From Bispira polyomma (lineage: Eukaryota): a stretch of 64,000 nucleotides of DNA. Position 1 is the first letter of the stretch; the number at the start of each line of letters is the position of its first letter. Positions 860 to 41,088 of the stretch are shown one piece after another. The DNA lies in contig OZ287749.1 of the NCBI GenBank assembly GCA_965649765.1, positions 76,322,001 to 76,386,000 of the forward strand, in the 5' to 3' direction. The notes beneath the pieces were generated by a model that saw only the letters and a list, made by a program, of their open reading frames with translations, searched no databases and was not told the origin of the DNA. The position numbers and the translations under genes are program-made.

Positions 860-1396
860 CTGGACACTCTTTCAAAAAGCATGGCTCCTGCTTGACAAAA
901 CCTCCCCGACATGGTTTACCACCATTATTGGACCTAGGTGCATTGGGCATTCTTCTAAAGGTTTGAGTACCTGCTCCACAAGTTTTACTGCATCCACCAA
1001 TAGCATTCCATGGCCCCCACACACAGTCCACTGTTTATATATACATATACAGTAAAACCTTTTTGTTCTTTTTGATTATTTTATATTTCACAATTTAGTA
1101 CATTAAGCAACATTTACATAGAAGAAGCACAACGGGTCTGTATGCAATTATGATTTCATAATATACATATATAACATAACTTTAGTTTATTTAATTTTTG
1201 GTTTGTATGGTCCAATCTACTTTTACAAACTTCACTCATTCTTTCACTCTACTCATTATTTTTCAGTCTATAAGGCATACTTCAATTTCCATTCTATCAG
1301 TTAGATGCCTGTAGAAAAAGGTATCAGAAATGAAATTAAACAGGAGAACCTGAACCAGTAGAATTTAGAATATGTTGGAAAAGCTAGATTTTTTTT

Positions 1397-1427
<31 letters not shown>

Positions 1428-4400
1428 AAAAGAAGGTTTAAAAAATTATAAAGATGGATTTTAGTATATAGCAAGAGGAAAACATAAATTAAGAGAGTTC
1501 AAAAATGTTTATGAAATTGTACATTCGGCTAACAAAAGTTCAGATAATAGACGTATATTAAATATAACGGAATCATTTACTTTTTAAGCCGTTTCTGTTG
1601 ATATAATCAGAGTATATATTATTCATTATCGTATAAGTTTCAGCGAATATTACTTACACAGGACGATTGTATATAAAGTGACACAAGACCAGAACTACCT
1701 GAACTACACACATTATAAATTCCTTCAATAATAAACCACTGACGTTAAAAGTTGTTCAGAAATTTGTTGACTGACCGAGTTTGTTTGTCCACAAAGTACA
1801 CAGATGTTCGTACATTGTTCACCATATGTTAATGTTGTGACAGGTTGAGTATATCCATCACTTAAGTCTATTATAAAGCTTAGTTTAAAAATGTGAGCTT
1901 GCCTGAATACATCTTCTAAAATCACTAAAATTCTTTGTAATACAGTGACAGGCAAATCATTTTTGGTTTTGAATTGTTATGCTCTCACATATGTCACCTG
2001 ATATTAGAAAAAGGTTGTATGAGTAAAAAAAATATTGCTATCACCAGTACTTTAGAAAATCTCTCATCAGATCTATTGAAATTTTGATACATCCACTAAT
2101 TTTTTGGTTATTTTATCACTTTTTAGAAGTTGTGATGTTGACTAACCAAATTGGCATTACTAATACATAAATATGATGTTGCTGTCATGTGTAACATGGT
2201 AGAGGGAGTCCAAAATGGCGATTTTTATGAAGAAACATGCTTATAAATAATCGGAGTTTATTTGTAAAGTCTCAGTTAATATGCAAACATTAGAATAGTC
2301 ATTCGTAGAATTCAAGCTTTCCATCATTACCAAAAAGAGTAGCCTAAAACACATGCAAACCCTTACACACACCTTGTCTAAGGATGTTATCTTAGAATTC
2401 TAGCAGCCAAACCAGGGACCTTCTGATCACCAATCCTGTACTCCCCCAACTGAGAGTTGACCCGTGGACTTTCTTATCACCAGCTAAATTCGCTAACCAT
2501 TGGGCCACGGGAGACCACTTATGACAATTGTTATACTGATCAGATTACATCATTAGTGAGACACAAAAATAGTTCAAAGTTTTTCATTGTCTCTTTACAA
2601 TTGGTAGCGAAACTTCACTCAGTATTAACTAGCTAAGCCGCATAAGCCTATAAGGCAGCACAGCTAGTATGCTTCCTTAAGGAGCTAGCTGAGACTGAAC
2701 AATTGGTTAACACGTAGAAGAGGCCAGACCAGGGTAATAATGTCAAAGCATATTAGATAACAGTGATGTTCACAACTCTGCTATATGGAATGATAATTAT
2801 TATTATTAGTATAAGTGTTTAGCTACACCCACCCACTTCCTCTTTTTAATATGTGGTTTCCGAAGGCCTACCTGCACACTGGGAGTGGTCATAGTCACAT
2901 GACCTACAGAGGGATAGTCGGCACCGTCTGCTGCATACGCCGCCTTGCTGGTGAATTATTGCCCTACACTGGGGCTTACTGATACAGCGACGGGTGATCT
3001 GAACATGTCTGCTGGAGAATGGTACACTTGTTATTTCTTCTAGGCAAATGGCCTGAAATTTAAGTGGTGTGTATATTAAATCCCCTCGCCACTGATGCTA
3101 TGTTATTATTCTTAGCAGTGGCCGTATTCTCAAAAGATCTTCAGGTCAACTTCGACTCAAGCTCAAAATGTAAAGTCCAAATATCTCTTGCTAGAATTAA
3201 GTAAATTACAATCTGGGTGTATATTTAAATTCAGCACTAAAATCTCTATGAAATTGAATGGTCAAAAGTATAGGTTTATCTCCATATACAATAACATCAA
3301 CACAGCCTTAAATTTCACTTGAGTCTGACTTTAAGATTATTTCGAGAATATGGCCTCTGGTGTTGTATTCCCCTCACAATATGGGACTCCAAGTGCTACT
3401 GATTATGTCTGTAAATCAAAATTCTAGTCTTTAAACAAAGCATTAGGAGTATCATAGCGTGGTACCCTGGTAACGCAATCAAACCTTAAAGGACTAGGAT
3501 AAATACTTCTACTTAAGCAGAATTTCTACTAAAAAAACAGCTGTCCATATAGGGTTTACTCGCTTAAGTTTCCAATATCCATAAGAAGGCACTTCCATAA
3601 AGATGGTGCTGTGTCAAAGAATGATTTAGAGAGCTATTTCTGACTTCCATATTCCCTTTTATAGAACTTGAAGATTTGGAGAAATTTGAGGTCTGGGTTT
3701 AACTCACACAATTGTTTCTAGCAGAGGTGATGATGGTGGACAAGTGTTAGACTGTACCAAGTGAAATTCCTGTTTACATTGTGTCACCTGGTTCCAGTTA
3801 GTAACTCAGGGAATCACTAATTTAGTGAACACACACCACTTCCAGCTTTTTATAAAGGCCTCATGTATATATTTTAACAGTAGATTTCTGTCAAATCTAC
3901 AGTACTCAAGGAAAATAAAACAACAAAATGGACTCATTGGTTTGTTACATATAAGAACATTGTGGTATGTTAAAGCACTCTGCTAGAGTGATCTTTTTAT
4001 AGAATTGGGGAAACCCCTAAGCTTCTAGAAGCTGGTTCTATTTTGTTTCTGTTGTTATTGAAGTTATTATAATTTGTTTACAATTTTATTCTGGAAAGTT
4101 CTAGCGATTGTTGTTTACATTCTTTAGCAGTGGTATATATAAAGGTTGACAGCCTGGCCACAGAGTAGAGTTTATTGAGTTGGTGTGCTATAGGAACTGC
4201 TATACTGTGAAACATTTTATTTCTTTTCCTGTGGATATAAACTGATTACTATATACGTTTTATGGTAAACTCATTGGAGTGAACTGGATAAAAGTTGTGG
4301 ATCTACCAGAGATTGGATTTACTGCATATTGGATATTGTTTGCATCCTGGACTGGATAGCTCAGTTGTGCAGACTATCTGGATATATACATTGTGATCGT

Positions 4401-7400
4401 GGACACTGGACTGATATCAGGCTACAGGCATTGTGTTAGCGGACACCGAGCGGATCTCAAGACGGATTGCTGGATACAGTGGACAAACTTGTTTAATTGT
4501 TATTTACGTGGACAGAACTGTGGTCAGGTCAGATCGGTTTCATTATTGTATGAACTATTAAGAGTATCTCAGTTGACTGTAATTCTGTAGTTGTGTAATT
4601 GTTATTTTATTTGTTAAATAAATTTGTTTAGTGAAACTTTTTGTCTTTTCCTGTTACAACCTAAAAGCAACTGGTAATTGCTACCGCGCTTGCTCCCGTG
4701 ACCGTAACATGGTTGCTGATAAACAGACATAACACTTGTGAATACACTTTGACCTCGGCTGCTATTTATCATGAGGTTAAAAGTAATTTTGTATTTTACG
4801 TTAAAGATGACTTATTGAAAAGAAATTAAAATAATTGTTTATGCTCTTGGCCTAAATTGATTTGGCCAGTTCCAAAATGTATGTATAGTATGCCTAAAAT
4901 GTTAACCACATTTTTAAGATCTGTAAAAATGGTACAGATGATAGGAACAAGATTTACAACTTATGAATTAAATATTACGTTAAAATATCTAGCACTGGAA
5001 TATGTAATTTGAATTCAAATGTATGTGTAAATTCTACTTCTTTGCTCTTTTCGTAAATTGTTTGTCTGTTTCCTATTATCACATTCATTAGACATGTAAT
5101 ACGAGTAGGTAATATAAACTACTGTTATTAAAGCATGTATATGACTCACATCGTCCCCTTCACAAGTAACCCATTCTCCGTAACGTTGACAATCGTAATC
5201 ACTTGTGGCATTCGTACAGGTCAGACACTTCAGATAGCCCTCGCCTTCATCACATGGATTGTCAGGAAATGGATCCTCTGTGCACAACACAAGTTCAGGG
5301 GATTTCTTGATTAAACTTAATTCAATTTATTTATTATAGTGAAGAGTGTATAAACTTACACAACGTACATGACACTCAGGCCATCAGAGCGCTTAAAAGT
5401 CACTTAAAACAGATACAATACATCCAGCCCACCAGAGAGCCTAAAAATCACTTTAAACTGTTACAATAAAATGTGTGGTGATACAGAATTCATACATGGG
5501 ATATATATAGTCATTATTTACTTTTATAAGAATACACCTCAGCTTTTTTTATATTCCCACCTTTTTCAACATAAATATGTAGAGATCTTGGGTTAAGTTA
5601 CAACAACATCGACCATATTCACAAAAGGTCTCAGTCTTAACCTAGGCTTAAGCTTAGGATTTAATTGGTCTTTGATTATGGCCGAAAAAGTTAAGATTTC
5701 AGTCTTAGTCTAAGTGACAGTAAAAAAAAAAATCCTCACTTAGTTTAAACTTTGTACTTAACACTAAGAGTGACGGGGGGCAGTCATGTATATTCAAAGC
5801 ATAAATGTTAAGCTTTAAAGACTAATTAGTTAAGACGAACACCTTTTGTAAATATGGTCCCAGAAAAACAGAAATACAGGGAATTGTCAATGAACATGAC
5901 ATATATTTATCTAGGTGATAATTTGATAGGTAGAATACCTGAATAGGGTAAAACACCAATACCCTCTATATACTACAGTAGAACCTCTATTATACGGACA
6001 TTTTGGCAGAGTAACATTTTGTTCAGATAATAGAAGGTTTGTAAAATAGAATAATGTAACTTTGGGGGGAGTGAAAATCAGTTCATAAAATTGAATAGTC
6101 AGATAATAGAAGTTTGGATCATAGAGGTTATACTTATAGTGTCATCTATATAGACTGTCACTACAATTAAACCTACCATCTATACACTGTCTGGTGCCAT
6201 CTAATACCCCGCAGTATTGGTCCTCTTCACACACGTGAGTGGTTGAGGTGATTAATAATTGGTCACATCTGTATTCTACAGAACAGTCCTCAGACAGCCA
6301 CACCTCTCCTTGCTTATATTACAAAAAGTAAAATGAAATCAGGTCAATTGTGCCAAATTTGTGCAGACCAGCAGAAACAGAGAAAATTTCTAAACAGGCT
6401 ATCCGAAACAGGAAAATTTAGTTTCTGCAGTAAAAATGTATACATAAAATTACCCTTAATTGCCCCTATACAGAAAACATATCAATCACAAGTAAAGCTA
6501 AACTCATTATAAACCCATGTATTAAATTTGGTAAACATACATGCAGTAGTTTTGTATGAAATCAGTGAAAGCCGTCTTCACATTGGCAGCAACAGCGGCC
6601 ATCTTGTGTTTTTTTTTCGTAATGGAGCCAAAATTAATCCCCAGCAAGTTATACCCATGATATAAACACATGTAATAAAATCGGTAAAAAATTATCTACA
6701 GTACTTTGGTTTTTAAATGAGTGGAAAAACTAAACTCGGACAGTAAAAGAGAGTTAGCACAGCACAATATAAAAAATATGAAAATATGCACATTGTTCTT
6801 TTTCTACACATCAGAAAGTTTACAAGCAGGCAAAAATGTGAAGGTTTTACAGTAATTTTTACCTCTCAAAATACTACAAACTTTACTTGTGAGCAAATTG
6901 TTTAAAGGGGGTTTACATGAATTTCTCTCCCATGTGATAATTTCCACTGCCATCCACACAGCTCATTGCTTTTTTACAGAAGAACAAAGCCTCTGACCGG
7001 CAATTGCTTAAGAGAGGGGAGATACAGTTTGGAGCAACAGCTAGGCATTATCATCATCGCATGGAACATGATCAACTTTTACAATCACACCCCAGCGAAT
7101 TGATCTAATGTTTAATAGGGCTGAAACGACTGCAGATCTGTGAATGATGATGTCATAATGCTTGTCCAGTACTGAGTTATTAATTAATAATCGGCATACC
7201 TATGCATCATATAACCAAATCTGAGGCTATTATTTGGAATAATTACTGAGAATTAACAATATAATATATTTTGCCAGCTGATAGAAGCTCATTTATTTTA
7301 TGTGCGCCGTAGATTTTCACTTCCGTTAATGACGCATGCGCTCTCAAAACTATAAATTGGCTTTAATTAACTAAAGGGTTTTTACAGTAATACTGTACCT

Positions 7401-10400
7401 TATGGTAATTTCCACTGCCATCCACACAGCCACACTGCTCTATCTCTACACATTCCTCTCCCTGTAACACTGTACCGCCCTCACACACACAGGCTTCTCT
7501 CTCAGGTAAGTCACATGACTCTGGAGCTTGAGGATCCTCACAGGTAGCTGGACATCCGCTGGCAGACTCAGAGTGTTCAAATCCATCGGGACAGATCACA
7601 GCTAAAATTAGGACATTGGAATCAAATACAGTGAATTAGCCAAATTGTGTCACTTTAAAGAGGTGTGGACTATTCAGAGGATTACAATTAACTCTGGTAT
7701 TAAAACGGGACCCAGGAACAAGTTTTCTCTACAGGGAGATGTTCACCATTTAGTCAAATCCCTTATTAGGGTATTTGCATGTATTGCAGTTACACATGGC
7801 CTTCATTTGAGTTGCGTCTGCAGAGGTAGGCTAGTTTTTATGTTACTTATCTGCAAAACGTAAATTAAAAAAATATACCAAATACCAAGTCCTTATATGA
7901 CAGCTTTGCAATTTTGTATGCTGCATATTTTGGCCGGAATATCATATTGTAAAGAAAAGATCGAAGATAATGTTTACTGTAACGCTCAATAGGTGTCACA
8001 AGATCCATTTATTTGCTATATATATATATGTCAATAACACGAAAACTCGTAGTAGTACAGAAACTAGTGATTTGACCATACATCTATATATATATATAGG
8101 TTGTCGGGGGTAATACCAGACAACTTACGACAATTGGCATCGTCTCTCCAATCTCTCACTACAGTACCCAGTACATCCTCACAGAAGTCCACAAATGACT
8201 CAATCACATCACACGCAGCCTCATGACGATGCTGATCATTGTCTCCCACTTCCCCACAATCATAGCTGCAGTCTTCCAGGAAGCTTTTGGCAGCATGTGG
8301 CAGCTCATCTATACACTGGAACAGGGGGCTGTCCGGGTCCTTAACGAGTATTTTACACTCGTCTGGAATTTCATCTGGGACCTCAATGTCAGTAACGGGG
8401 TCCTTACAACTAGATAAAAAATAAAACATAAATTCCTTTGCAGAGGGTAATGTTATGGCACAGTATTTATCAAACGTCTTAAACCCATAGTTACATTCAT
8501 TGATCAATAGATTTCCTTATTAATGAAAATAATCTACATAAGTTACGACTCACTTTAGAGAGCTCCATGTAGTCAGATTTTATGTATAATTTTTATGTTA
8601 TAAAAGCTGATTAAAATCAACATAGTAGTATAAGATTAGTTTACGTAGCTCATAATGGCGACTTATTAATAAAAACACTTAGTGTTTATAATCAGTGGTC
8701 AACAGACACTTGAAAGTGACCCTTCAGGTTGAACTTGAGAAACACTTGAGAAAACATTTTATTGCTAAATTTTCATCTGAACCAATTAGATTGACAAAAA
8801 AATCTGAATGGCTTAGACAAAGAATGTAGGTGAATACAGCCCCTGATCTGAGCCTGACCTTTGAATGTCATCTGAGTAGACTTTCCAGCTGTTTCCTATC
8901 TTGCTGTACATATCACTGTCACCAGACACGTCCTCTCCATCTTTGGTCACACAGTCGTCTGGTTGGTCTCCATTCATATTCCCACAGATACCCTCCACCT
9001 CAGAACTGAAAATAGAATAACATGCATGCCTCAGGTTATCATTTTTTTTTTTCAAAAAAGGTGCTTGCTTCAACTCCTAGTTTGGGGACTTGGTCTGGTG
9101 ATCGGAGAGGTTACCGTGTAACCCCCAGAATACACCCCTTTTATATTATTATACCTGGGTCCTGGATTCTGGGAGGGCTCATTAAATCTACCTCAAAGTA
9201 TACCCCGGGGTAAATTCTAGGCCATAAAAGAATCTACAATCTACATTCTCCTACTAAAATAGCAAACGCAAACACATTTTTTTATTAAACCAGCATTATT
9301 AAAATGTTAAAATGACGCAAACAGAATAGTAATTCATTTCTAAAGCTGAAATACGAAAGGACCAGAGAAATAACAACAAGCTTTGGTTATTATTTACAAA
9401 TTCTGAATCTTCCAGACTACAATGTACTAAGACATCAGAGGTAAATACAATAGAACCTCTATTATCGGAATACGTTCAGAGAGCACATTTTATTTGTTCA
9501 GATAATACAAGGTTCATAAAATAGAAGGAATGTTTTAGTAAAAAAAAAAGATAAAGGAGACTATCAATCTGACAGAGTGAAAGCGTATTTTTGCGAATAT
9601 TTTTGAATAATAGAAATTTAGGATAATAAAGGTTCTACTGTAACACTTTTGGTAATCATAAACAGGAACACTTCATGATACATGTATATATTTCCCTACC
9701 AGTAGTTGTCTGGGAGAGTCACAGAGACTGCGTGTCTGCCATCGAAAGTCACCCGCAGTCCAAACTCTGTTTCTAGTGTCACTGTGCGCCGACCGTCAAA
9801 TTCTATGAGTACGTTTGGGATTCCACTGTAGGGTAAGGCCACAACGACACTATCCACCTCAGAAATAATGTACAGCATGGCTAATGTATTCACAAAGATT
9901 CTGAGCCTAAATGTTTTGTCTCAATCAATTTCATAATGTTTTTAAAGATTCTGATTGGCTGGGACTAAACAAAGTTAAAGAATTTCACTCGAAGAATTTT
10001 GTGAATACAGCCCCTGAACAACATAACACACTTCCTGTTTCTGCATACAGGTTACAATAGAATATCTGTTATCCAAACATGTTGAGGGCAGTGAGATTTT
10101 GTTCAGATAATACAAGGTTCAGACATTTTTGTTCTAAAAACAATAGCAAAACATAAATTAGAGATTAATTCATAAAATTGAATATTCATATAAAAGGACT
10201 TTTGGATGCCATGATAAAGTGATCGCTTGTGGGACTCATCCAAACTGTTGCACTATAAAGAGGTGTACGATATACTTTCAGAGGTACTGTACAATTACCA
10301 GGTATCAAAACAGTTCTTTCGGTTCCCTGCGATAGCTTTCTCTTGGGGTCGAAAGGGTTAAATTTGGTCCAAGCAGAAAGAAGTTAGCCATTACAGTAGG

Positions 10401-13400
10401 ACCAAATCCTGTGGATATTGGACATTTCGACTTGTACAGAATCTACTGTGGTTTACTTTACTTCGAAGAAATCTGTGTTTTACATTTTAGCAAAAAAAAA
10501 ACATTGAATGATATAATGACCGTTACGGCATGACCATTATTATGTATGCCTATTTAATACTGCAACTCACTGCGCTTTAGTCGTATAAAAGTCCAACCTT
10601 CCAGCTCAAACAAACACAATTACTAGATGCTAAATGTACTGTATTTTATCACTGATCTTATAAAGCACACCAATTGTAGAGCCTTCTATTCACATCTACA
10701 GTGTACACATTATTTCCTGTGTGTATGTGAAATATGTGGTTTCATACAACATGAATTTTTAGGTATCTGTTTTTTGGACAATCCTTACTGCAGTGCGTAT
10801 GAAATGTTTGTTAAAAATAAGATAAGATCTTTGAACGAAGTATTTGGAGCTACCAGTAATTATAGTGTCTTGCGTAGAATAAAATGGTGTAACAATAGTC
10901 TTATTGAAGCATATCTGAACAGCCCTGCTGAAAAAAAAGGTTTGAAATAATTACCAAATGGAAGAAATCTGTTTATGTATATTCAGTATTACTGTGTACA
11001 ATTAATTTTATAACCTTAAAATATTTTTTTTTTCTCATTTATATGACCTTATGTATTTTTATGCGATATATAATGTTTGAAATTAACATATACATAAATT
11101 ACAATATACTACACGCCACTCACCAATACTACCCCTCCTTGTCTGAGTATCACCTGGTGACCATACACTAGTACAGTCACAGTCTTGGTATACGACACCC
11201 TGGTCTTTCCATTTCTGTGCTCATTCTCTACCAGCACCTGGAATTCAGTCTCTGTGGTATTCTCTATAGTACCACTTAACAAGTACCTACAGGTACCCTG
11301 GAAGTGGATCATCTTACCGTCAAAGGTCTTGTAATGGGGATCACCAGAGGCTGAGCAGGTCAAACCAGCTGTTAAGTACAAGATGAGATGATTTTGTTTT
11401 GTATTCACATTTAACAAAATTATCATTTATTTAATTTATTATGTACCTTTATAATGTATTCAAAACACTATTAACCTTTTCTTGACTTCTCAAGTATAGC
11501 AACCAGCACTATGTAACTGTCATTCAACTAACAGAAGACAGAGCTTTGTCGTTAACAAATTATCAACATCGCCAAGGTTTGTTAGCTTGCCACTAGGGTT
11601 TTACTAAGGACCCAATAACAGAGGAATGTCATTTTTAGTAAAAGGTTAGTGCAATATACCATAAGATTTTTCTCAGAGCAATAGAGGGTTGAGATTTGAA
11701 CCCACAATTAGAGAGGTGGTAGCCCGTAGTGTTACCAACAGTACCCCAGATGTTAGTATGAGAGGACAAATAAATGGTCACATTTAAATATTACAGATTA
11801 CTTTGATTGACAAAGGCCACTTGTACATGAAATTATCTCTCTTTGAAGCATAAACTAGAAAACCCCTAATTGATTGTAATATATAAGCAATATATTATTA
11901 GTAAAGCTTTTAGGACTGCATAAGGTCACATTTATACCTATACTCTATTTGCACTGCATATGTATAAAAGAATTCAATACTATTTAAAGCTTTCAGGACC
12001 TCAATATTAAAGATTAGGTGACTTTTTCACTTTGTAATTTATCCCCAGGGGCCATCCTTATCTAAGTGTCTTAAATTTATGCTGAAACTCAAATAGCACA
12101 TGATAAATATACAGATTGCATCATTTCATGGAAATAACCTACACATGTTACTATACATTTTAATAGAGCTTTCAGCAAGAAATTCAAATAATTATGTAAT
12201 CATACTATATATTTTTTTTTTCTTGCACACAAAGATACAGAAGATCATAATATGTGATTATAGTGAATGTAAGAATTTTTATAAATACTGCCCCTTTAGC
12301 TTCAGTTAAACACAGTGTAGAAACTTTCTTACCCCCTAAAAAAAAAAAAAAAAATTAAAAAATTCTGCACTTAATGTAGTGCAATAAGGCCTAATCTCAC
12401 AGTGTGAATGTTGATATGTAGCACATATTACCTTTATGCCCTCAGGTTATAATACACAACATTATAGTATCTTTCTCTGGGAAAGTATCTACACTGAACA
12501 TGAGATTTGTGGAGAATATCTCTAGTTGTGATTGAGTAAGTGGCCTTCTGCATTAACAAAAAAGCTCGCTTAATAATAAAATGCTACACTGACAAGGTTT
12601 GTCTTTTGTATATGTCACATAATCAGTCATAAAATCATGTTCACACATTTTTTCTGCCTGTCTTTGTCAATTATTTTCAGATTTTTTTCACTATAAATAT
12701 TTACATGTTACGGGTTTTACACTAAAATGTTATCACACCTGTGAGAGGTACTTATATTTTACAGTATATTACAAACTGCTGCTATTATTATTATTTTGCT
12801 AACAGTGAATTTTACTATCATGATTCATATTGTTAAGACAGAAACAACATTTAATAAAATCCAACAACATGCTGATGATTGTTACATTATAGCCAGGTAA
12901 TTTAATGTTACCAGCCGAACATAATTTGCATCTATGTGCTAATAGCATTCTGTGAAAACTTATTCAGGTCATAGTAAGGCTGAAAATCAATAAGAACTAA
13001 TGCAAATAAGAAAAACCATTTTGAGAAGCAGATATTTGTTTTTGAAAGTTTTAGTATCATTACTATCGTACACACGAAATGAAATATTAACATAATTTAA
13101 GTCCTAGTTATGCACAAAACACCCAATAAAAAGCTACACTGACAATGTTTGACTTTTATAAATGACACATGATCAGTCATAAAATCTTGTACACACATTT
13201 CTGCTGTCTTTATCAATCATTTCAATTTTTGTTCTCACTAAATGTCAAGATGTTACAGTTCTTACAATTAAATGTTATCACATCGAATGTGTCAATAATA
13301 ATATTGGATTTCTTGATCGACACATTTTAAGGTTTAGTAAAATCCAAAACACAATTATGCACTCCCAGACTAGTCTTAATTTTTAGGTGCGTTATAATAG

Positions 13401-16400
13401 AGCGATAATATCCTGGTTAGAAATATTTACGTAAAATCCTTTTCAAGAAATTCTCTCCAGGTATAATTTATTTGTATTTTGAAGATATTGATCAACTCTT
13501 TTGTTATATTTTAGGAAATACTGACATTTATATGCCCCCACTTGCACATGTTTCTCTTAATTCATGTACACAATCGTATGTAGCCCTACAGTTAATAAAC
13601 ATAAGTATTTCTTATTGTACAACCACTTGAAATAAAAGACAAATTGGAAGTCCCCAAGATATTATATAAAAAAGACTCTATAGAAATGTCTTTACTTTAG
13701 AATCGTTGTCCACTTACTAATAAAAAATGTTTAAAAAAAATACATTATAATTATAAAAGTGTAATCATGATATCTAAATTTGCACCTGTCTTGATGGCAT
13801 CATAGTGCTTTGCTGTTATTGCTCCTGTTACATGGAACAAGTTTTCACAACAGACTGTTAGTTCACAGGATATAATCACTGGTTTTAGAACTTAGACATA
13901 CCTTTTCAGGCTGGCCGAACCACCCCCCTCGCCCCCTCCCTTCTATACTACTCCTTAGTTTCCCCTGGTTGGATGCCTGTTGGTAACCACCTTTTTGCTC
14001 GGCCTTGGACTTTCCTTTTTGTTTGGATATCATCACCTTAAGAGGCGCCTTATAAATGCTTCAACTATAATAAGCACCATCAGGGTAAATATATTGCATT
14101 GTGTGTCAATACCTTGATCTTTACATGCCCCACACTTGAGGTTGGACTGTTGACAGCCACATTTAGTGGACAAAGACCCATCATGGTGTTCTTCCAGTAG
14201 ACACTGCTCCTCCATACCACAATGACTTGGACAGGGAGCTGTTGAAAGGAACCATAGTTTTTACTCTACTGCCTTGCTAGATATTTTCGTCATCAGCAAC
14301 ATAAACATACTTTTAATTAAAGCAAAGACGTGGAAATTATATATTAACTGTTACAGGTCAATATATCACAACAATACCAAAACATAGAATTTTATTCAAT
14401 TTAATTGCATTTAATATTTTTAAGTAATTTTGAAGGTGTAGCATATTTAAGGAGGCTAATGTTAAGTATTGTAGAATACAATATTATTGAAATAGACAAT
14501 ATGTTTGAGCACACTAGCAAGAACAAAATTTCCCACAGACACACTTTAACATATATTAAAGGTGCATTTGTAAAATCTAAAGAGAAGAAAAATCTTATAC
14601 AATATCATTACAATTAACAATTCTCAGAAAACCATCAAAGACAATACTTACTCACAGACAGATAATTTCCTTTTTTAAATTATGTTAAAATGTTTTACTT
14701 ATAGAAATCTAACATTAAGTATTCTACCGTACATTATTATTGTAATTAGAGTAAGGAATCTAAAATTAGCAACCCCAAAAATTTAGGTCAAACTAATAAA
14801 AACTGGCAAAAATTAACTGGAATTTAGGTAAGTAATAGTCACAAAAATCTCAATTTTAGCAAATATTACCACACAATACTACCAAAAGCACAACACTTTC
14901 TATATTTCTTAAGGAGCGAATATACCTGGCTGATTTTGCGTCCAAATCCCTCATCTGTTTTAGACATCCGGAAAAAATTAAAATAAAATAAAATAGAAAA
15001 ATAGATATACATGACCGGCGGCACATCCGAATCAGCAGCCAAAATTTTCGAAATCGGTCAAAAACCAAATTTTTACATCTGAACACTTAAGTAGTAACAA
15101 TACTCAACAATAAAAAAACAGCCAGTTTTTTATATGTAGTGTATCTGCAAACTTGGACATCAGATGGCGGAAATGGACATTGGATGATGGACTGACGTAA
15201 AATCGGCCAGGTCTATTCGCCTCTTAACTCCACTATTATTTAGCACAATATCAAGAATGTATTTACTCACGGACACATCTTTCTTCACTGTGTGGCTTTC
15301 CCCTTCCTTTACCTCTGTTGGCTTTTCTTTTCAAGCCATTTAGTTTTTTGTGTACGACACACACGTATTCCACTTCGAGGTACTTGTAGGTATGTCTACA
15401 TGGGTCCCCAAAGTATTTAGAGTCTGCTATGAGCACACACATCTTCATATTGTTACAACGACACTGAACTATGCCTTTTGCAGCTGGACTGTAGCAATTT
15501 GTATCATCCATATGATTTCTGTTAAAAGGGGTAAAAAAACACACACATTATCAATGATTTAGCTATAACTGAAGTTGTTTTTTCATCTTTAAAGTTTAAC
15601 ACACAAAACATATGTATTAATTTGTATTTATATTGTGATTAATTAAATGTTTCTAGATTCACAAACATATTTTTCTGTATATGTTACACAATCCATAATA
15701 ATTTTTATTTTAAAAAACAAACTTGCAGCCAAAGCTTCATTATTTAAAGAAATTAAGAAACAAAGTGTCTGTTCGGATAATAGAACACTCATAAAATAGA
15801 CAATGCATCTAAAAGTGCAAAACGATAGGAAAGCATAAAATCTGGAATAGTGAAAATGAGTTCATAATTTAACTAAAATATTTGGAAAATAGAAGTTCGG
15901 ATAAAAGAGGTTCTATTGCATATATTTTAAACAAGTGACAAACTAATTGTACCATAATTATGAAAAAGGGAAATGTAGTTTTACAGAATTCTAGACAAAA
16001 CTTTATCATTTTAACACTAATCACCAAAGTGGCAATTTAACAATGATCATCAAAGTGGCAATGGTGAAAACATGGATAGAGCAACAAAATAATCACCTGG
16101 CTTACAAACATATATTATCATGTATCAGGAGGTTTTTTAAGACAGGATTGAGAAGGAATTTTACACAGCATGGATTGTACCTGTTAGTAGGGCAGACTTC
16201 ATTATCTGATTGTGTCCTGCCAAAGTTAGAATCAATAACTCGGATGACTGATCCAGATGGACATTTCAGCTTCATTTTTCCCTGGTTCTCACACAAAATT
16301 GCAATATTTGGCTGGCACTGGGTGTCTATATAATGTAACAATAGAAATATGATAAACTTGTTTTTAACATAATTTGTATAAGTAAGGTTGACCATTGAAT

Positions 16401-17758: not shown

Positions 17759-18037
17759 GTTCTGAAAAATTTCACTCTATTGTAAAACAATTTTACTTCA
17801 TTAGCTGTACCAATCACATTCGTTTTTAACTTAGCAGAAATTTGATTAATAAATTGCAACTAAAATTGACATTTTTAAGTTGTTTAAAGCAAAATTACAT
17901 GCATAATTGTATAAAGGAACCAAAAACATTAGCGTGCATAAATATAATAGAACATTACATCTGTATTATTTGGGGTAAAACCCTCAAACCCCAATCTAAA
18001 ATTTTGGGGCGAGAAAGTAAGAATCCTGACGTCATAA

Positions 18038-24924: not shown

Positions 24925-25581
24925 TTAGTGTGGTGCGGCACCATTGTTGCACTTATCGCCATCACAGAAGCAGTAGATGGCACCACCTTGGTAATGACAT
25001 CCGGTCTTGTAGGGGTTCACACCAAACTCGCCCTTGTAGCAACCTCTGAAGATGTCTCCATTGGGGTCCTTTCTGACATAGCAGTTGCTGGAGCAGTCCC
25101 ATACATCAAGACCAAACATCTCTGCTTCCTGACCACTGAATGGGCCCATACACTTGTCCCAGCCTCCATTGATGGTGTAAGGCACAGGTACATAGGTTTT
25201 CTTCACATAGCCTCCCTTTTGTTGTCCGTAACTATTTTTCTGCTGCTGTTGTTTGTATCCACTCTGCTGCTGTTGCTGGTGTGGTTGTTGTCCGTAGCCT
25301 TCACTGGACTGGTGTCCGTATCCTTGCTTGTTCTCTGTACCGTATTCCTTGCCGTATTTTACAGACTCTACAACGATCTTTTTACCATAGTAGGTCTTGG
25401 GTGGAGAGTATGCACACTGGTAGCAATTCTTTCCTTTCTTCTTGTAGGTCTTGGGCTGGTCCCCATAGCCTACTTGCTGCCCATATCCTTCCCCTTCTTC
25501 TCCTCCTGCATTAGACTGGTATCCAAAGCCATAACAAATGTCAATGATTACAGCAAGGCAGAGGAGAACCAAACCTTTCAT
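24925..25581 (-). CDS. Secreted Gly/Tyr/Gln/Lys-rich Ly6/three-finger (Quiver-like) protein, copy 1 (218 aa)
   Basis: Intronless ORF; signal peptide MKGLVLLCLAVIIDICYG; 10 mature Cys in LU spacing (CYQC...C...CSSNC...RGC...C...CFCDGDKCN); conserved in three copies; upstream TATA. Confidence 0.9.
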   Translation of the reverse strand: MKGLVLLCLAVIIDICYGFGYQSNAGGEEGEGYGQQVGYGDQPKTYKKKGKNCYQCAYSPPKTYYGKKIVVESVKYGKEYGTENKQGYGHQSSEGYGQQPHQQQQQSGYKQQQQKNSYGQQKGGYVKKTYVPVPYTINGGWDKCMGPFSGQEAEMFGLDVWDCSSNCYVRKDPNGDIFRGCYKGEFGVNPYKTGCHYQGGAIYCFCDGDKCNNGAAPH

Positions 25582-27107: not shown

Positions 27108-27114
27108 TATATAA
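27108..27114 (+). promoter_or_regulatory. TATA box of Ly6-like copy 2
   Basis: TATATAAG about 120 bp upstream of ATG 27233, in the same conserved block. Confidence 0.7.
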
Positions 27115-31179: not shown

Positions 31180-31304
31180 TTAATTTGAACTGACAAATTT
31201 ATTAAACAAGGTCATTCATTAAATGAACTAATAGAAATGCATTTGCACATGAGAACATGGCTCCTTAATCCTTCTCAAAGCATGTCCTTTTTAGTGCACG
31301 TTGT

Positions 31305-34567: not shown

Positions 34568-35838
34568 AGGGTAATCATAGATCTGAGTTGGCCGGAAGGT
34601 GGTAGTGTAAATGGGGGTGTCCTGAAGGACTCCTACTTAGGTACCAAATTTATCCTTACATTTCCTTCAGTTGATAATATAGTAGAGCAAGTGAAGTCCT
34701 TTGGAAAGGGCTCACATATATACAAGATAGATATTTCTAGGGCATTTAGGCATGTCAAGATAGATCCCAAAGACTATGATTTGTTAGGCCTCTACTAGAA
34801 AGACTTCTATACTGACACATGTCTTCCCTTTGGGTCTAGGCATGGTAGCCAGATCTTTCAGAGAATTAGTGATGGAGTAAGGTATATCATGAGTAAAAAT
34901 AACCACAAGATTATCAATTATATTGATGATTTAATAGGCTGTGGTGTACCCAGCAAAGCTAAGGCAGCGAATGACTTCCTGTACCAATTACTAGGTGAGT
35001 TAGGTCTTACCATCAGTGCAAAAAAGTTAGTTCCACCAAGTACACAATGCATATGTTTAGGAGTACTAATTGACATTGTACAAGGTACCATTTCTATTCC
35101 TGTAGACAAACTAGAAATCAAAGTCAAAACTTGTGCCACTTGGTAGGATTTTGAGGTAACCACAAAAAGAAAACTGCAGTCATTATTAGGTTCTCTCTTA
35201 TATGTCGCAAAATGCTGCAAGCCAGCTCGCATTTTCCTGAACAGAATGTTGACTACTCTTAGAGCTGCTAGTAATCCGAAGCGTATTGTACCAGATGAAG
35301 AATTCCACAGGGATGTTAATTGGTTTCAGTCTTTTGTAGCTCAGTACAATGGTGTCACCTTCTTTAACCACAAGCCGGTGGCTGCAGTCATTGAATTAGA
35401 CGCATGTTTAACTGGGGTAGGGGCCAGGTATGGGGATAGGTTATACACTCTACCAATTCCCCAGTCCATCCAAAGTATCGGATAGTCAGACTAGAAATGG
35501 TAAATATTGTGGTGGCTTTGAAGGTGTGGGGTAGTTACTGGAAAGACAGCAAAGTGGTTATCCGTTCTGACAATAGTGCAGTAGTATCAGTGTTAAACAC
35601 AGGTAGGACTCGAGACAAATACCTTGCAGCTTGTGCAAGGAATGTATTTCTCCTTACAGCTAGGCACAACATAGACTTAAAGGTAGTGCACATTTTAGGC
35701 ATTAATAATGCAGTGGCTGATACACTATCCAGGTGGATGGGCTCCAAATCTCAGTGGCAAATAATAAACAGGCATGTTAATGATCCTGTTTGGTGTGACC
35801 TTAAGCAAGAGGCCTTCCACCTGGATTGGTCCATATAG
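34568..35838 (+). pseudogene. Reverse transcriptase / RNase H of the YR retroelement (disrupted)
   Basis: RVIIDLSWP, YKIDISRAFRH, LPFGSRHGSQIFQRISD, NYIDD, LQSLLGSL, IELDACLTGVG, IRSDNSAVV, NAVADTLSRW; stops at about 34796, 35144 and 35483 plus a frameshift before 35497. Confidence 0.9.
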
Positions 35839-35869
35839 ATTAAACATTATTGTAGGTACTACTCCAGTC

Positions 35870-36835
35870 ATGAAGGCCCTGACCACTGGTGCCATTGGGA
35901 GGCTCACAGGAGCATTCAGGCCGTCTACACAACGAGCCTATACGGCTATGTTTAGAAACTTCTTAGGGTTTTGCTGCTTCACAGCTATTTCAGTGCATAG
36001 AATTACAGTCCATGTCTTATTGGCATTCATGGAATTCTTGGCCTACAATAAGACCTCTCCATCTCAAGTGGCCAATTACATGGCAGCTATTAAGTCCAGT
36101 TTATCAGTATATAGCCTACCAGTTCATGTGTTTTCGGATAATAGGATCAAATTGTTCCAAAAGTCATTGTTACTAAACAGACCACTCACTGTAAAAATGA
36201 AAGGCATATTCCAAGTGCAGGACTTGGAAAAAATTGTCCAGTTGTCTGACACTATGTTTATGGGTCAGGTGTATAAATCCATTTATTTGTTAGCATTTTT
36301 TGCTTTCTTTCGTATTTCAAATCTAGTTCCACATGCAAATGAACCATTTGATCCATCGGTTCACTTGGCCAGAGGAGACATCTTTTTTGCTCCACCAGGG
36401 CTGCAAGTACTACTGAAATGGTCAAAGACCATGCAATCAAAGAATAAGGTTCAGCCAATTAAAGTTCCCTCACTAGGTGGGTCTCCAATATGTCCTGTAA
36501 GTGCAGTAAAAAATGTATTGTCCCTTACATCTGGGGGAAAAAATCACTAGTTATTCCAGATTAAGAAAGCAGGTGGTTGGAGTCCACTAAATGATAACAT
36601 GGTTAGGCAACATTTAAAGAAAGTGGTATTGGCTTTAGCGCTAGATCCTTCTACTCACCCCTTTCATACCTTCAGGCATTCAGGTACCACCTTGGCATTC
36701 AACTCTAACGTTCCAATACAACAGATCCAAAAACATGGTACCTGGACGTCTGATTACGTCTGGAAATATATTGTAGACACCCAGGACTCGGCTACCCAGG
36801 TGGCTACTACCTTTCAAAATCTACTTTCTCAATAA
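35870..36835 (+). pseudogene. Tyrosine recombinase of the YR retroelement (one in-frame TAG at 36548-36550)
   Basis: FFRISNL (R), KWSKT (K), CPVSA, HTFR (HxxR), HGTW, WKY (catalytic Y); ORFs 35774-36550 and 36599-36835 are in the same frame. Confidence 0.9.
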
Positions 36836-39150: not shown

Positions 39151-40346
39151 TTCGCAGGATTTTCTAGAAAAGGCTATAATGAGTTTTAATATGCCATTCT
39201 CTAAAAGTGTGTGGAAATGGAATATATTAAAAACTTTGTAGCCCTGGCTAAGTTGCTTATTTTGTCAATAAAGAATTTACCAAATTTATCTGCTAAAAAT
39301 GTGAGGCAGTGATTGAACTTTTTTAAATGTAAGGTGAATAATTCTGTTTATTTAGTCCCAGAATGACATGTTATTGAGGCCATTTGGACTATAGGTATTT
39401 ACTTTGGATATTTGGCAACAGAATATTTGACAATAAGTGATTTTCCCCACAATAAACAGAAAAATAAATGGGTATAAGTGGCAAGTCGTGGCTCTTATGG
39501 ATATCCCTATAACCTTAGAACGGTGTGCCAATCTGTAGATATACAATCATATAACCAGTGTTTCTAAAACTAAAAAGAAAATCCATACATTTGCTGATTT
39601 ATTTAATACTAATAATAATAAAAGTATACAAAAACAGTGTTGTACAAAAAAGATGACACATGTAATCTATTAGATTCTACCAACGTTGTAATGGAATTGT
39701 TTAAATTGATGAAACATACAAAATATCAAGGTAAACGTTCATTACCAAATCGATAGTAATAAAGAAAAATAACCCCAAAAACATTCCATAAATTGATATC
39801 TTAACACAACTAAATATTGCCAGGCAGTAAATGTATCCCTTCCATATTAAGGCTATTTGCTCAATAAATACAGCTTGTTTAGCTATGACTTTAAATCCGA
39901 CAAAACTGTTATCAATAAAACACGATATTTTGGTCTTTTGGTCAGATTTATCTACAAAAGAACACAATATACTTTGGTGTAGAATTTAATTTTTATTTTA
40001 TGTAAAAACTGTTCAAGTATCATAGCTTAGTATTTTGTGGGTGTTCTTTTACTAGTGATCATATGATCTGTGGACATCAACTAATTTAAATCCTCAAACA
40101 CATTCAATTATTTTCAACCATTCTTCTCTTTTCACTTGACAATTTGATTACATAATATAAAACAAAAACACTTTCTTTTAAAATTGATGCATACTAATGT
40201 CTAATGTCCTCCCATTCCAGTTTGTAGTTTGTCACACTTACACACAGATAATAAAAACAATATATAGAAACTTGGATGGCTTAAATTGTAATACAGAAAA
40301 ACACACACACACATTATAATAATATCCTTAAATCTTCTGTACGACC

Positions 40347-40982
40347 TTAGTGAGGTGCGGCACCATTATTGCACTTATCGCCATCACAGAAGCAGTAGAT
40401 GGCGCCACCTTGGTAATGACATCCGGTCTTGTAGGGGTTCACACCAAACTCGCCCTTGTAGCAACCTCTGAAGATGTCTCCATTGGGGTCCTTTCTGACA
40501 TAGCAGTTGCTGGAGCAGTCCCATACATCAAGACCAAACATCTCTGCTTCCTGACCACTGAATGGGCCCATGCACTTGTCCCAACCTCCATTGACAGTGT
40601 AAGGCACAGGTACATAGGTTTTCTTCACATAGCCTCCCTTTTGCTGTCCGTAGCCTCCTTTCTGCTGTTGCTGATGTGGTTGTTGTCCGTAGCCTCCACT
40701 GGACTGGTGTCCGTATCCTTGCTTGTTCTCTGTACCGTATTCCTTGCCGTATTTCACAGATTCTACAACGACTTTCTTACCATAGTAGGTCTTGGGCGGA
40801 GAGTATGCACACTGGTAGCAATTCTTGCCTTTCTTCTTGTAGGTCTTGGGCTGGTATCCATAGCTTACTTGCTGCCCATATCCTCCCCCTCCTCTTCCTC
40901 CTCCTCCTGAATTAGACTGGTATCCAAAGCCATAACAAACTTCGATAATTACAGCAATGCAGAGGAGAACCAAACCTTTCAT
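40347..40982 (-). CDS. Secreted Gly/Tyr/Gln/Lys-rich Ly6/three-finger (Quiver-like) protein, copy 3 (211 aa)
   Basis: ATG at 40982-40980; near-identical to copy 2; flanks 39600-41730 homologous to the flanks of copies 1 and 2. Confidence 0.9.
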   Translation of the reverse strand: MKGLVLLCIAVIIEVCYGFGYQSNSGGGGRGGGGYGQQVSYGYQPKTYKKKGKNCYQCAYSPPKTYYGKKVVVESVKYGKEYGTENKQGYGHQSSGGYGQQPHQQQQKGGYGQQKGGYVKKTYVPVPYTVNGGWDKCMGPFSGQEAEMFGLDVWDCSSNCYVRKDPNGDIFRGCYKGEFGVNPYKTGCHYQGGAIYCFCDGDKCNNGAAPH

Positions 40983-41088
40983 TGTTGATGATGGTTTTTG
41001 CACAATGTTTACTAAAATCGGTTAATGTATTGTGAGCTGTTTTCAAGTGACTGAACTGTTTTGTGGTCTGTGTTGAGTTGTGTGTTGC

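What the first reader, a model, noticed from the sequence alone, without database searches (positions are those of the whole stretch)
860..41000. Possible co-regulated secretory 'glue' cluster: a VWD-lectin scaffold gene next to three Tyr-rich Ly6 genes
Seen: within 41 kb the only host genes are four secreted, Cys-rich proteins with low-complexity Lys-rich segments, and the large one also carries a three-finger-like module (LKCLTC...C...C...ITRRC...C). Established: VWD(GDPH)+C8+galactose-binding lectin domains co-occur in invertebrate adhesive proteins such as sea star Sfp1. Inference: the large protein may be a gel-forming, glycan-binding scaffold and the amplified small proteins its cross-linking partner.
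Basis: inference. Interest (0 to 1): 0.75.

Follow-up and report, generated by a model that had tools for sequence, protein, structure and literature searches.

The report
Worm matrix genes beside three-finger retrocopies
A segmented-worm genome places three intron-free copies of a small secreted "three-finger" protein with a long tyrosine-rich loop next to large lectin/von Willebrand-type matrix genes, which makes them plausible tube or glue components, but nothing yet shows that they work together.

Summary
The four genes are real and roughly as described. The claim that they form a co-regulated glue cluster is untested.

**Small genes** (24925-25581 -, 27233-27856 +, 40347-40982 -)
- They encode secreted, basic proteins rich in Gly, Tyr, Lys and Gln, under purifying selection (dN/dS 0.04-0.18).
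- They belong to a family known mainly from annelids and have a three-finger (Ly6-type) fold.
- The first finger carries a 35-312-residue low-complexity loop across the family.
- All three lack the introns of a paralog on another chromosome, exactly at the exon joins. They therefore look like processed retrocopies that were later duplicated together with their flanks.

**Large gene**
- Domain order: signal peptide, a K/S/H-rich basic stretch, SUEL lectin, VWD (with GDPH), C8, TIL, TILa, a weak Ly6-like module, TSP1.
- It does not end at 860. That exon closes on a consensus splice donor, and more TSP1 and Ly6-like exons lie left of the window.
- Further left lie paralogous mosaic units.

**Linkage and expression**
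- In one related species, orthologs of a small gene and of the C8 exon sit on contigs of identical length, so probably the same 1.9-Mb contig.
- The intron-bearing paralog has no such neighbour.
- No RNA run exists, so co-expression could not be tested.
- The defining features of gel-forming mucins are absent.

The scan had already noted both stretches, and a similar three-finger retrogene amplification elsewhere in this genome.

The parts
17134..17758 (-). Large gene, exon 1: ATG, signal peptide, then a K/S/G/H/D-rich basic low-complexity stretch that includes a 108-nt internal repeat
   Evidence: ORF. Composition K 22%, S 21%, H 10%, pI 10.3. Donor CCAT|GTAAGT. Tandem repeat at 17432-17633.
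16181..16325 (-). Large gene, exon 2: N-terminal half of the SUEL (D-galactoside/L-rhamnose) lectin domain
   Evidence: Pfam PF02140, E 5e-4, profile positions 1-34. Splice phases fit exons 1 and 3. Boundaries are predicted and not confirmed by RNA.
15313..15518 (-). Large gene, exon 3: C-terminal half of the SUEL lectin domain, followed by a K/R/G-rich linker
   Evidence: Pfam PF02140, E 2.8e-13, profile positions 26-80. 48% identical to the paralogous exon in L014.
14113..14238 (-). Large gene, exon 4: small Cys-rich module with no family match
   Evidence: Eight Cys in the ORF. No Pfam hit. Paralogous exons lie in L012, L013 and L014.
11124..11368 (-). Large gene, exon 5: start of the VWD domain, with the GDPH motif
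   Evidence: Pfam PF00094, E 9.7e-18. 64% identical to the paralog in L014.
9700..9857 (-). Large gene, exon 6: middle of the VWD domain
   Evidence: Pfam PF00094, E 5e-3, profile positions 78-131.
8859..9005 (-). Large gene, exon 7: end of the VWD domain
   Evidence: Pfam PF00094, E 3.1e-5, profile positions 129-155.
8129..8409 (-). Large gene, exon 8: C8 domain
   Evidence: Pfam PF08742, E 2.4e-7. Ortholog fragment P0146 at 58% identity. Three paralogous exons at 34-35% identity left of the window.
7399..7601 (-). Large gene, exon 9: TIL domain
   Evidence: Pfam PF01826, E 1.7e-8.
6177..6312 (-). Large gene, exon 10: TILa domain
   Evidence: Pfam PF12714, E 3.2e-6.
5150..5277 (-). Large gene, exon 11: N-terminal half of a Ly6/three-finger-like module (weak)
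   Evidence: Pfam UPAR_LY6_2, E 6e-4 to 8e-4, below the cut-off. Profile of 10 paralogous exons against PDB: Lypd6B, E 0.013.
2872..3052 (-). Large gene, exon 12: C-terminal half of the Ly6-like module
   Evidence: Cys-rich ORF. No Pfam hit. Phases fit exons 11 and 13. The two halves were not joined or folded.
860..1030 (-). Large gene, exon 13: TSP1 repeat. It ends on a consensus splice donor, so the gene runs on past the left edge of the window.
   Evidence: Pfam PF00090, E 9.6e-9. CCAG|GTGAGT. Further TSP1 and Ly6-like exons in L015 and L008.
24925..25581 (-). Small gene 1: intronless 218-aa secreted three-finger protein with an 87-residue G/Y/Q/K-rich first-finger loop
27233..27856 (+). 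Small gene 2: 207 aa, head-to-head with gene 1
40347..40982 (-). Small gene 3: 211 aa
22747..29951 (.). Inverted duplication that holds small genes 1 and 2 with their shared upstream and downstream flanks. The same unit recurs around gene 3 (about 39363-41659).
   Evidence: the repeat finder families D1-D8 and I1-I23. Flank identities 75-95%.
34889..36835 (+). Broken retroelement with tyrosine-recombinase and RNase H-like pieces (DIRS-like). It is filler between the genes, not part of the system.
   Evidence: Weak Pfam hits to RVT_3, Phage_int_SAM_5 and Phage_integrase, all below the cut-off.

Best explanation
Two unrelated kinds of secreted-protein genes lie side by side. The adjacency is secondary.

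(1) The large gene is one member of a local tandem family of extracellular mosaic proteins. Its order is: signal peptide, a charged low-complexity head, SUEL lectin, a Cys-rich module, one VWD-C8-TIL-TILa unit with GDPH, a Ly6-like module, then TSP1 and more Ly6-like modules that lie left of the window.

(2) The three small genes are retrocopy-derived members of a secreted family known mainly from annelids. In this family a 10-Cys three-finger (Ly6/QVR-superfamily) core carries a long, disordered, basic Gly/Tyr/Lys/Gln-rich loop in place of a normal first finger. There is no GPI-anchor tail.

Shown:
- gene structures and domains;
- the three-finger fold;
- purifying selection on all three copies;
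- precise intron absence compared with the C12 paralog;
- duplication of the copies at DNA level together with about 0.4-0.85 kb of upstream sequence;
- probable contig-level linkage in one related species.

Inferred:
- Both kinds of product go into an extracellular material such as tube lining, cement, cuticle or mucus.
- The mosaic protein binds glycans and matrix through its lectin, VWD and TSP1 modules.
- The small protein offers a compact disulfide-locked knob plus a flexible Tyr/Lys loop for cohesion or oxidative (DOPA-type) cross-linking.
- Whether they are made in the same cells or bind each other is unknown.
For: Small family.
- 23 homologs at E<=1e-3 among 106 candidates. Those that carry a name are all annelid: Paralvinella, Capitella, Owenia, and Pectinaria gouldii 'CM3 protein'.
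- 123 representatives at E<=1e-3 in 1.84 billion proteins.
- Of 10 distant hits scanned, 5 match Pfam QVR (Ly6-like), 2 of them above the cut-off.
- The AF2 model of the natural short-loop member P0009 has pLDDT 86.6. In the VIA-align search of 48,161 chains, ranks 1-38 are all three-finger proteins (Z 6.8-3.8) and the next row is Z 2.3. The window protein's own model gives the same picture (pLDDT 57; the loop, residues 75-124, is below 50).
- Loop I measures 35-312 residues in the 33 members that have both flanking motifs.
- dN/dS is 0.04-0.18 at dS about 0.17.
- The C12 paralog has introns at ..TIN|GGWDKC.. and ..DPNG|DIFRG... DNA similarity to copy 1 covers exons only, and the blocks abut in the copy. 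Homologs from other species break off at the same two points.

Large gene.
- Pfam domains, phase-consistent splice chain, donor at 860, downstream TSP1 exons, paralogs.

Linkage.
- P0001 (78% identity to small gene 1) and P0146 (58% identity to the C8 exon) both come from ENA, each on one contig of 1,891,194 bases.

Analogy.
- Passages on Sfp1 and Mlig-ap1/ap2 in PMC6410801.
Against: - There is no expression or proteomic evidence at all.
- No Pfam model matches the small proteins. Foldseek gave no hit at E<0.1, and every VIA Z-score is below 8.
- No poly(A) remnant and no A-run of 8 or more is left behind the copies. Target-site duplications were not looked for. DNA similarity to the C12 gene does not cover the first ~50 codons, and the candidate C12 first exon is only 29% identical at protein level. 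The C12 gene may therefore not be the direct parent.
- That the two contigs are the same is inferred from equal length only.
- Family members occur in annelids with very different tube habits, so a cement role is not implied.
- The meaning of 'CM3' could not be found.
Confidence: 0.6

Rival explanations
1. The four genes form a co-regulated secretory 'glue' unit. The VWD-lectin protein is a gel-forming, glycan-binding scaffold, and the amplified Tyr-rich three-finger proteins are its cross-linking partners.
For: - The domain set resembles known adhesive proteins.
- The composition is Tyr/Lys/Gly-rich and basic.
- Copy number rose to three intact, selected copies that kept a shared promoter stretch.
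- The two kinds of gene are probably on one contig in a related species.
- A retrocopy that lands in a secretory-gene neighbourhood could borrow its enhancers (inference).
Against: - The small genes came in by retroposition, and their intron-bearing paralog has no such neighbour.
- Linkage between close relatives is expected by default.
- The window gene has a single VWD-C8-TIL unit, no mucin domain and no cystine knot was seen, so 'gel-forming' is not backed.
- No expression data exist.
- 'Ly6' and 'three-finger' do not occur in the tubeworm adhesive paper I searched by terms (PMC11667028).
Confidence: 0.2
2. The small proteins act like ordinary secreted Ly6-family proteins: soluble ligands or organisers of receptors, junctions or chitin. 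The long loop is a spacer or a binding surface. Their position next to the mosaic genes is an accident of retroposition.
For: - Three-finger fold and transitive homology to QVR-type Ly6 proteins.
- The core is highly conserved while the loop varies freely in length and composition, G/Y/K-rich in most members and V/T/E/K-rich in others. This fits a conserved binding core.
- One distant hit pairs QVR with a chitin-binding domain (P0129).
- Roles of insect Ly6 proteins in septate junctions and chitin organisation are recalled from memory, not from any call.
Against: - The loop makes up about 40% of the mature protein, and its Gly/Tyr/Lys bias is kept in most members, as expected of a material protein.
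- Brachiopod and Owenia relatives also join a Ly6 core to Tyr/Gly-rich repeats.
- Three selected copies suggest a demand for quantity.
Confidence: 0.2
3. The small ORFs are dead retropseudogenes and the 'cluster' is an annotation mirage.
For: Intronless copies lying among transposon debris.
Against: - All three frames are intact.
- dN/dS is 0.04-0.18 at dS about 0.17, and the C-terminal domain is identical at protein level despite synonymous changes.
- An ortholog at 78% identity exists in another species.
Confidence: 0.02

Closest known systems
Ly6/uPAR (LU, three-finger) superfamily, Pfam QVR branch; secreted members such as the SLURPs
   Same: Ten Cys, with an N-terminal CxxC and a C-terminal C-x-C...CN. 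Three-finger fold. The family profile reaches QVR-type proteins. There is no membrane anchor, as in secreted Ly6 proteins.
   Different: No curated Ly6 model matches directly. The first finger holds a low-complexity insert of 35-312 residues. The window copies are intronless. A 2026 survey of invertebrate LU proteins lists annelid architectures only as 'LU, RK' (passages of PMC13719153).
Pectinaria gouldii 'CM3 protein' (AHA44498.1 / V5L1P4), an unpublished database entry
   Same: Same family: 44% identity over 75% of the query, E 6.8e-40. Same Cys framework.
   Different: Short loop of 47 residues with little Gly/Tyr/Gln repeat. What 'CM' stands for, and where the protein is made, could not be found in the paper library.
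Sea star Sfp1 and flatworm Mlig-ap1 / Mlig-ap2 adhesive proteins
   Same: Large secreted Cys-rich mosaics that combine a lectin, VWD-C8(-TIL), strongly basic Lys-rich regions (ap1) and C-terminal TSP1 repeats (ap2) (passages of PMC6410801).
   Different: No sequence relationship was tested or claimed. Here the lectin is SUEL-type, the basic region is K/S/H-rich and only about 180 residues long, Ly6-like modules are interspersed, and no EGF array or discoidin was seen. Presence in an adhesive secretion is unknown.
Gel-forming mucins / von Willebrand factor / SCO-spondin-type VWD-TSP1 proteins
   Same: A VWD-C8-TIL-TILa unit with GDPH, and TSP1 repeats.
   Different: One VWD unit per repeat in place of D1-D2-D'D3. 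No mucin domain, no cystine knot and no LDLa was seen among the Cys-rich ORFs of the region. SUEL lectin and Ly6-like modules are added.
DOPA-type Gly/Tyr/Lys-rich cement and foot proteins of tubeworms and mussels
   Same: Secreted and basic, with Gly 17-20%, Tyr 11-12% and Lys 10-11% in motifs such as GYGQQ and GGYVKK. Tubeworm cement is DOPA-rich and made in dedicated glands (passages of PMC11667028).
   Different: Those proteins are repeat polymers without a three-finger core (recalled from memory). No DOPA, gland expression or tyrosinase link was shown here.

Membership tests
Ly6/uPAR three-finger superfamily (small proteins) | Conserved 8-10 Cys framework with an N-terminal CxxC and a C-terminal CxC...CN | tested here: met
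   The Cys columns are invariant or nearly invariant across 25-26 family members.
Ly6/uPAR three-finger superfamily (small proteins) | Three-finger beta fold | tested here: met
   P0009 model with pLDDT 86.6: ranks 1-38 of 42 rows are three-finger proteins, Z 6.8-3.8, and the next row is Z 2.3. Window protein model with pLDDT 57: ranks 1-38 of 47 rows, Z 5.9-3.8, next row 2.7. Foldseek alone found nothing at E<0.1.
Ly6/uPAR three-finger superfamily (small proteins) | Significant match to a curated Ly6 family model | tested here: not met
   No Pfam family at E<=1 for any of the three proteins. The link is transitive only: the family profile finds proteins that match Pfam QVR, 5 of 10 scanned and 2 of them above the cut-off.
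Processed retrogene (small genes) | All coding introns of the source gene are missing exactly at the exon joins | tested here: met
   The C12 paralog has at least two coding introns. blastn blocks abut at query positions 1634 and 1744 of copy 1. Homologs from other species are truncated at the same points.
Processed retrogene (small genes) | Poly(A) remnant and target-site duplication | tested here: not met
   No A-run of 8 or more within 1.3 kb downstream of any copy. Target-site duplications were not searched for. Such marks may have eroded at dS about 0.17 and beyond.
DOPA-type adhesive or cement protein (small proteins) | Basic, Tyr/Gly/Lys-rich low-complexity sequence | tested here: met
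   Mature proteins are G 17-20%, Y 11-12%, K 10-11%, pI 8.6-9.0. The loop alone is Y 14%, K 14%, pI 9.5.
DOPA-type adhesive or cement protein (small proteins) | Made in an adhesive gland, present in the secretion, Tyr converted to DOPA | not testable with these tools
   No RNA run is on record. The three runs that hold the gene are genomic DNA. No proteome was available.
Gel-forming mucin / VWF-type polymer (large gene) | Several N-terminal VWD assemblies plus a C-terminal cystine knot for end-to-end polymerisation, and a mucin (PTS) domain | tested here: not met
   The window gene has one VWD-C8-TIL-TILa unit. No cystine-knot-like ORF was seen among the Cys-rich ORFs left of the window, although Pfam was run on only 10 of them. 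The only Ser run has 9 residues.
Sfp1 / Mlig-ap-like adhesive mosaic (large gene) | Lectin + VWD + C8 in one secreted Cys-rich protein | tested here: met
   The comparison rests on passages of PMC6410801.
Sfp1 / Mlig-ap-like adhesive mosaic (large gene) | Presence in adhesive footprints or glands | not testable with these tools
   No expression or proteome data.
Co-regulated gene cluster | Correlated expression of the members | not testable with these tools
Co-regulated gene cluster | Linkage conserved in other species | tested here: inconclusive
   P0001 and P0146 each lie on an ENA contig of 1,891,194 bases, so they are probably on one contig, at unknown distance and in one close relative only. 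The intron-bearing paralog on C12 has no such neighbour within 10-14 kb. More distant genomes could not be reached.

The most novel reading that the evidence does not exclude
A new class of material protein. A disulfide-locked three-finger knob presents a long, disordered Tyr/Lys/Gly loop that can be oxidised and cross-linked. An RNA-derived copy landed beside a family of lectin/VWD/TSP1/Ly6-like matrix genes, captured their secretory-gland regulation and was then tripled. Knob and scaffold are therefore secreted together, and the knob docks on the scaffold while the loop cures the tube or cement.
Probability: 0.15. Interest if true: 0.75.

Novelty: new variant of a known kind. Interest (0 to 1): 0.45.

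Why it matters
If the small proteins are matrix or cement components, they would show a way of building a biomaterial that has not been described. A folded three-finger domain, usually a receptor ligand, would serve as the anchor for a low-complexity, possibly DOPA-forming loop.

The locus also offers a clean case of a retrocopy that stayed functional, kept a promoter stretch through later duplications, and sits next to a tandem family of lectin/VWD/TSP1 mosaics. That makes it useful for asking how retrogenes acquire regulation.

For annotation, the practical gains are two:
- The large gene is about twice as long as the window suggests.
- Ly6-like modules occur inside VWD/TSP1 mosaics in an annelid, an architecture not listed for annelids in the 2026 survey whose passages I read.

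Tried and rejected
- Pfam on the three small proteins: nothing at E<=1.
- Foldseek against PDB for both models: no hit at E<0.1, although most of the top rows are three-finger proteins.
- ESM Atlas: only weak leads (0.75-0.78) to activin-receptor and UPAR/Ly6 clusters. I used these as a hint only.
- Papers. I found no paper on the Pectinaria gouldii 'CM3 protein' or on Ly6 proteins in annelid tubes or cement. One search was badly framed and returned noise.
- Expression. The look-up of sequencing runs listed three runs, none on record as RNA. Laid on 11950-17949, their contigs cover all 30 bins, introns included, with pieces of 2412-2943 nt and no differences. They are genomic DNA. They confirm the assembly, possibly from the same sample, and say nothing about transcription. 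The joints listed there lie in repeats and are not introns.
- Pseudogene reading: rejected by dN/dS.
- Gene end at 852-860: rejected.
- Poly(A) tail behind the retrocopies: none left.
- Shared promoter between copy 1 and the C12 gene: no colinear DNA match upstream or in the first ~50 codons.
- Not done: a search for shared cis-motifs between the large gene and the small genes, which I judged unreliable without expression data. Also not done: a full exon model of the units left of the window.

Full report
**What is in the window.** The window is G000:C2:76322001-76386000 of a 1.04-Gb, 75-contig genome. It has 31-46% G+C and no N. The named homologs of its small proteins are all annelid, so the organism is a segmented worm.

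**The three small genes: structure.**
- The ORFs at 24925-25581 (-), 27233-27856 (+) and 40347-40982 (-) encode 218, 207 and 211 residues. They are 93-95% identical at protein level.
- Each begins with a signal peptide.
- The mature proteins are Gly 17-20%, Tyr 11-12%, Lys 10-11% and Gln 9-11%, with pI 8.6-9.0.
- Each has ten Cys: CYQC near the N-terminus, then 76-87 low-complexity residues, then a compact block GGWDKC...NCY.R...RGCY...CFC..D.CNN. Six residues follow the last Cys-Asn. There is no hydrophobic tail, so no GPI anchor is expected.

**The three small genes: selection and duplication.**
- Pairwise dS is 0.166-0.173 and dN/dS is 0.15, 0.18 and 0.04. The C-terminal block is identical at protein level in all three despite synonymous changes. 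These are working genes.
- Copies 1 and 2 lie head to head inside an inverted duplication (about 22.7-29.95 kb). Copy 3 repeats the same unit.
- About 420 bp upstream is shared by all three copies, and about 850 bp by copies 2 and 3. About 1.0-1.1 kb downstream is shared at 75-95% identity.

**What family the small genes belong to.**
- Pfam finds nothing at E<=1.
- A word-indexed search found 23 proteins at E<=1e-3 among 106 candidates. Those that carry a name are annelid, among them 'CM3 protein' of Pectinaria gouldii.
- A profile of 26 sequences, run against 1.84 billion representatives, found 123 proteins at E<=1e-3, 79 at <=1e-10 and 20 at <=1e-30.
- I scanned ten of the distant hits. Five match Pfam QVR (the quiver-type Ly6 domain). 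Two of these are above the curated cut-off: a limpet protein with three tandem domains, and a protein that pairs the domain with a chitin-binding module. Two match DUF7622 and three match nothing.
- Relatives in Owenia and the brachiopod Lingula also join such a core to Tyr/Gly-rich repeats.

**Fold of the small proteins.**
- The AF2 model of the window protein is mediocre overall (pLDDT 57). The core scores 63-78 and residues 75-124 are below 50.
- The natural short-loop member P0009 gives pLDDT 86.6, with 105 of 155 residues at 90 or more.
- In exhaustive structural alignment against 48,161 chains, ranks 1-38 are three-finger proteins for both models: Ly6/uPAR family, TGF-beta-family receptor ectodomains and snake toxins. 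Z is 6.8-3.8 for P0009 and 5.9-3.8 for the window protein. The next rows drop to 2.3 and 2.7.
- All Z are below 8, and Foldseek alone gives nothing at E<0.1. The fold call therefore rests on the clean separation from unrelated rows, the Cys framework and the transitive QVR link.
- In the models the first finger is a long beta-hairpin whose tip is the low-complexity insert. In the 33 stored members that have both flanking motifs, this loop is 35-312 residues. It is G/Y/K(/Q)-rich in most and V/T/E/K/I-rich in a minority.

**Origin of the small genes.**
- A genome search found seven matches: the three window copies, and four exon-sized pieces of a single locus on contig C12.
- That locus has coding introns after ..PYTIN and after ..DPNG.
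- At DNA level, copy 1 matches it only in the exons (77-84% identity), and the matching blocks abut exactly in the copy.
- Truncated gene models from other species break at the same two points, including Capitella after ..DPNG. The introns are therefore ancestral, and the window genes are best read as descendants of a processed mRNA copy that was later duplicated as DNA together with its flanks.
- Caveats: no poly(A) remnant survives, and the first ~50 codons have no DNA match to the C12 locus. The C12 gene may be a sister of the true source.
- The C12 locus has no VWD, lectin or TSP1-like Cys-rich ORF within 10-14 kb on either side.
- An earlier report of this scan describes another amplified three-finger retrogene elsewhere in this genome. 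I did not check it.

**The large gene inside the window.** On the minus strand, 13 exon candidates carry the following:
- a signal peptide and a basic head (K 22%, S 21%, G 11%, H 10%; pI 10.3), with a 108-nt internal repeat;
- a SUEL lectin split over two exons;
- a small Cys-rich module;
- VWD over three exons, with GDPH;
- C8, TIL and TILa;
- a two-exon Ly6-like module;
- TSP1.

A chain of canonical GT/AG sites with matching phases runs through all 13 exons, and the exon 1 donor is CCAT|GTAAGT. The boundaries I give are predictions.

The Ly6-like module is weak. Two of 10 paralogous N-half exons hit Ly6 Pfam models at about 1e-3, below the cut-off. A profile of the ten gives Lypd6B at E 0.013 as its best PDB hit.

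**The large gene is longer than the window, and it is not alone.**
- The TSP1 exon ends CCAG|GTGAGT, a 7-of-8 consensus donor. The apparent stop codon lies inside that donor.
- Left of the window, on the same strand, come three more TSP1 exons, a Ly6-like exon pair, two TSP1 exons and two more Ly6-like pairs (L015, L008). Five of the five putative TSP1 ORFs scanned match Pfam TSP_1. Four are above the cut-off and one is just below, at 20.3 bits against 21.6.
- Further left (L014 to L010) lies at least one paralogous gene. It starts with its own signal peptide and a DNDSEGKD-type charged repeat. It is followed by SUEL, Cys-rich, VWD, C8, TIL, TILa and Ly6-like exons, repeated about three times, then four TSP1 exons and several Ly6-like pairs.
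- Identities to the window gene are VWD 64%, SUEL 48% and C8 34-35%.
- The module order after the last TILa (Ly6-like, four TSP1, Ly6-like...) is the same in both genes. This supports reading the exons left of the window as part of the window's gene.
- Without RNA I cannot say whether the left region is one giant gene or several.

**Linkage and expression.**
- The only database hit to the C8 exon (1 of 7 candidates) is a 147-residue fragment, 58% identical, on an ENA contig of 1,891,194 bases.
- The closest relative of the small genes (P0001, 78% identity) is on an ENA contig of the same length. They are probably one contig, so the two kinds of gene are within 1.9 Mb in one related species.
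- The counterpart of the C12-type gene there (P0022) is on a contig of a different length, 3,378,111 bases.
- This is the default expectation for close relatives and says little about function.
- No RNA run is on record. The three runs that hold the small gene proved to be genomic DNA.

**How it most likely works.**

Shown:
- secretion signals;
- the fold of the small proteins;
- the domain content of the large gene;
- purifying selection;
- retro-origin followed by local duplication;
- a neighbouring tandem family of mosaics.

Inferred:
- Both products are extracellular matrix or tube components.
- The mosaic can bind galactoside or rhamnoside glycans through SUEL, and matrix through VWD and TSP1.
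- Its GDPH motif may allow acid-triggered cleavage, as in other VWD proteins. This is established knowledge of that motif and was not tested here.
- The small protein pairs a rigid, disulfide-locked knob with a flexible, cationic, Tyr-rich loop. That composition is shared with DOPA-type cement and foot proteins (passages on DOPA-rich tubeworm cement; repeat motifs of those proteins are recalled only).
- Lectin + VWD + C8, Lys-rich regions and C-terminal TSP1 repeats are the building blocks of the sea-star and flatworm adhesives (passages).
- This is resemblance in kind, not homology, and the features that define gel-forming polymers are missing.

**Verdict.**
It is weakened by the retro-origin of the small genes and by the unlinked paralog.
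- The most interesting solid result is the family itself: an apparently undescribed, mainly annelid branch of three-finger proteins with a giant low-complexity first finger, here tripled from a retrocopy. No paper on it was found in searches. The 2026 invertebrate LU survey lists annelids only as 'LU, RK' in the passages I read.

Noticed in passing
window 52399-53820 (-) and 60522-62006 (-): Two paralogous intronless ORFs of 473 and 494 aa. Each has an N-terminal P-loop/GTPase-like region (weak Pfam hits to Septin, MMR_HSR1 and AAA_29, all below the cut-off) and a conserved Cys/His-rich block near residue 300-350.
   Followed up: partly
window 44300-49100: A G+C-rich island (0.43-0.46) with a MADF-like ORF (45139-46002 +) and a DDE_Tnp_4 transposase (47940-49076 -, E 4e-29). 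It looks like a PIF/Harbinger-type transposon.
   Followed up: partly
window 18035-18391: A 103-bp tandem repeat (3.3 copies, 77% matches) starts about 280 bp upstream of the large gene's ATG. Whether it has any role is unknown.
   Followed up: no
window 17432-17633: A 108-nt (36-codon) tandem duplication inside the coding low-complexity part of exon 1 of the large gene. The basic head grew by internal repeat.
   Followed up: no
L009 about 6250-6530 (G000:C12:27380250-27380530, -): Behind the second coding exon of the intron-bearing paralog lie at least five tandem in-frame copies of its last 13-14 codons (Y.K.SYV..PYTIN type). They could be alternative exon ends or a local slippage array.
   Followed up: no
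L012-L014 (G000:C2:76272001-76302000): Near-identical TIL, C8, Ly6-like and Cys-rich exons recur at spacings of about 7.3 and 8.9 kb. This is a very recent tandem repeat inside the paralogous mosaic gene region. Two of the three C8 matches there contain stop codons within the aligned frame, which may be intron read-through or decay.
   Followed up: partly
window 62858-63462: A 60-bp tandem repeat, 10 copies, 92% matches.
   Followed up: no
window 12350-12549, 14750-14949 and 15750-15949: In the three DNA runs these bins have word depths 100 to 1000 times above their neighbours, so they hold high-copy repeats inside introns of the large gene.
   Followed up: no
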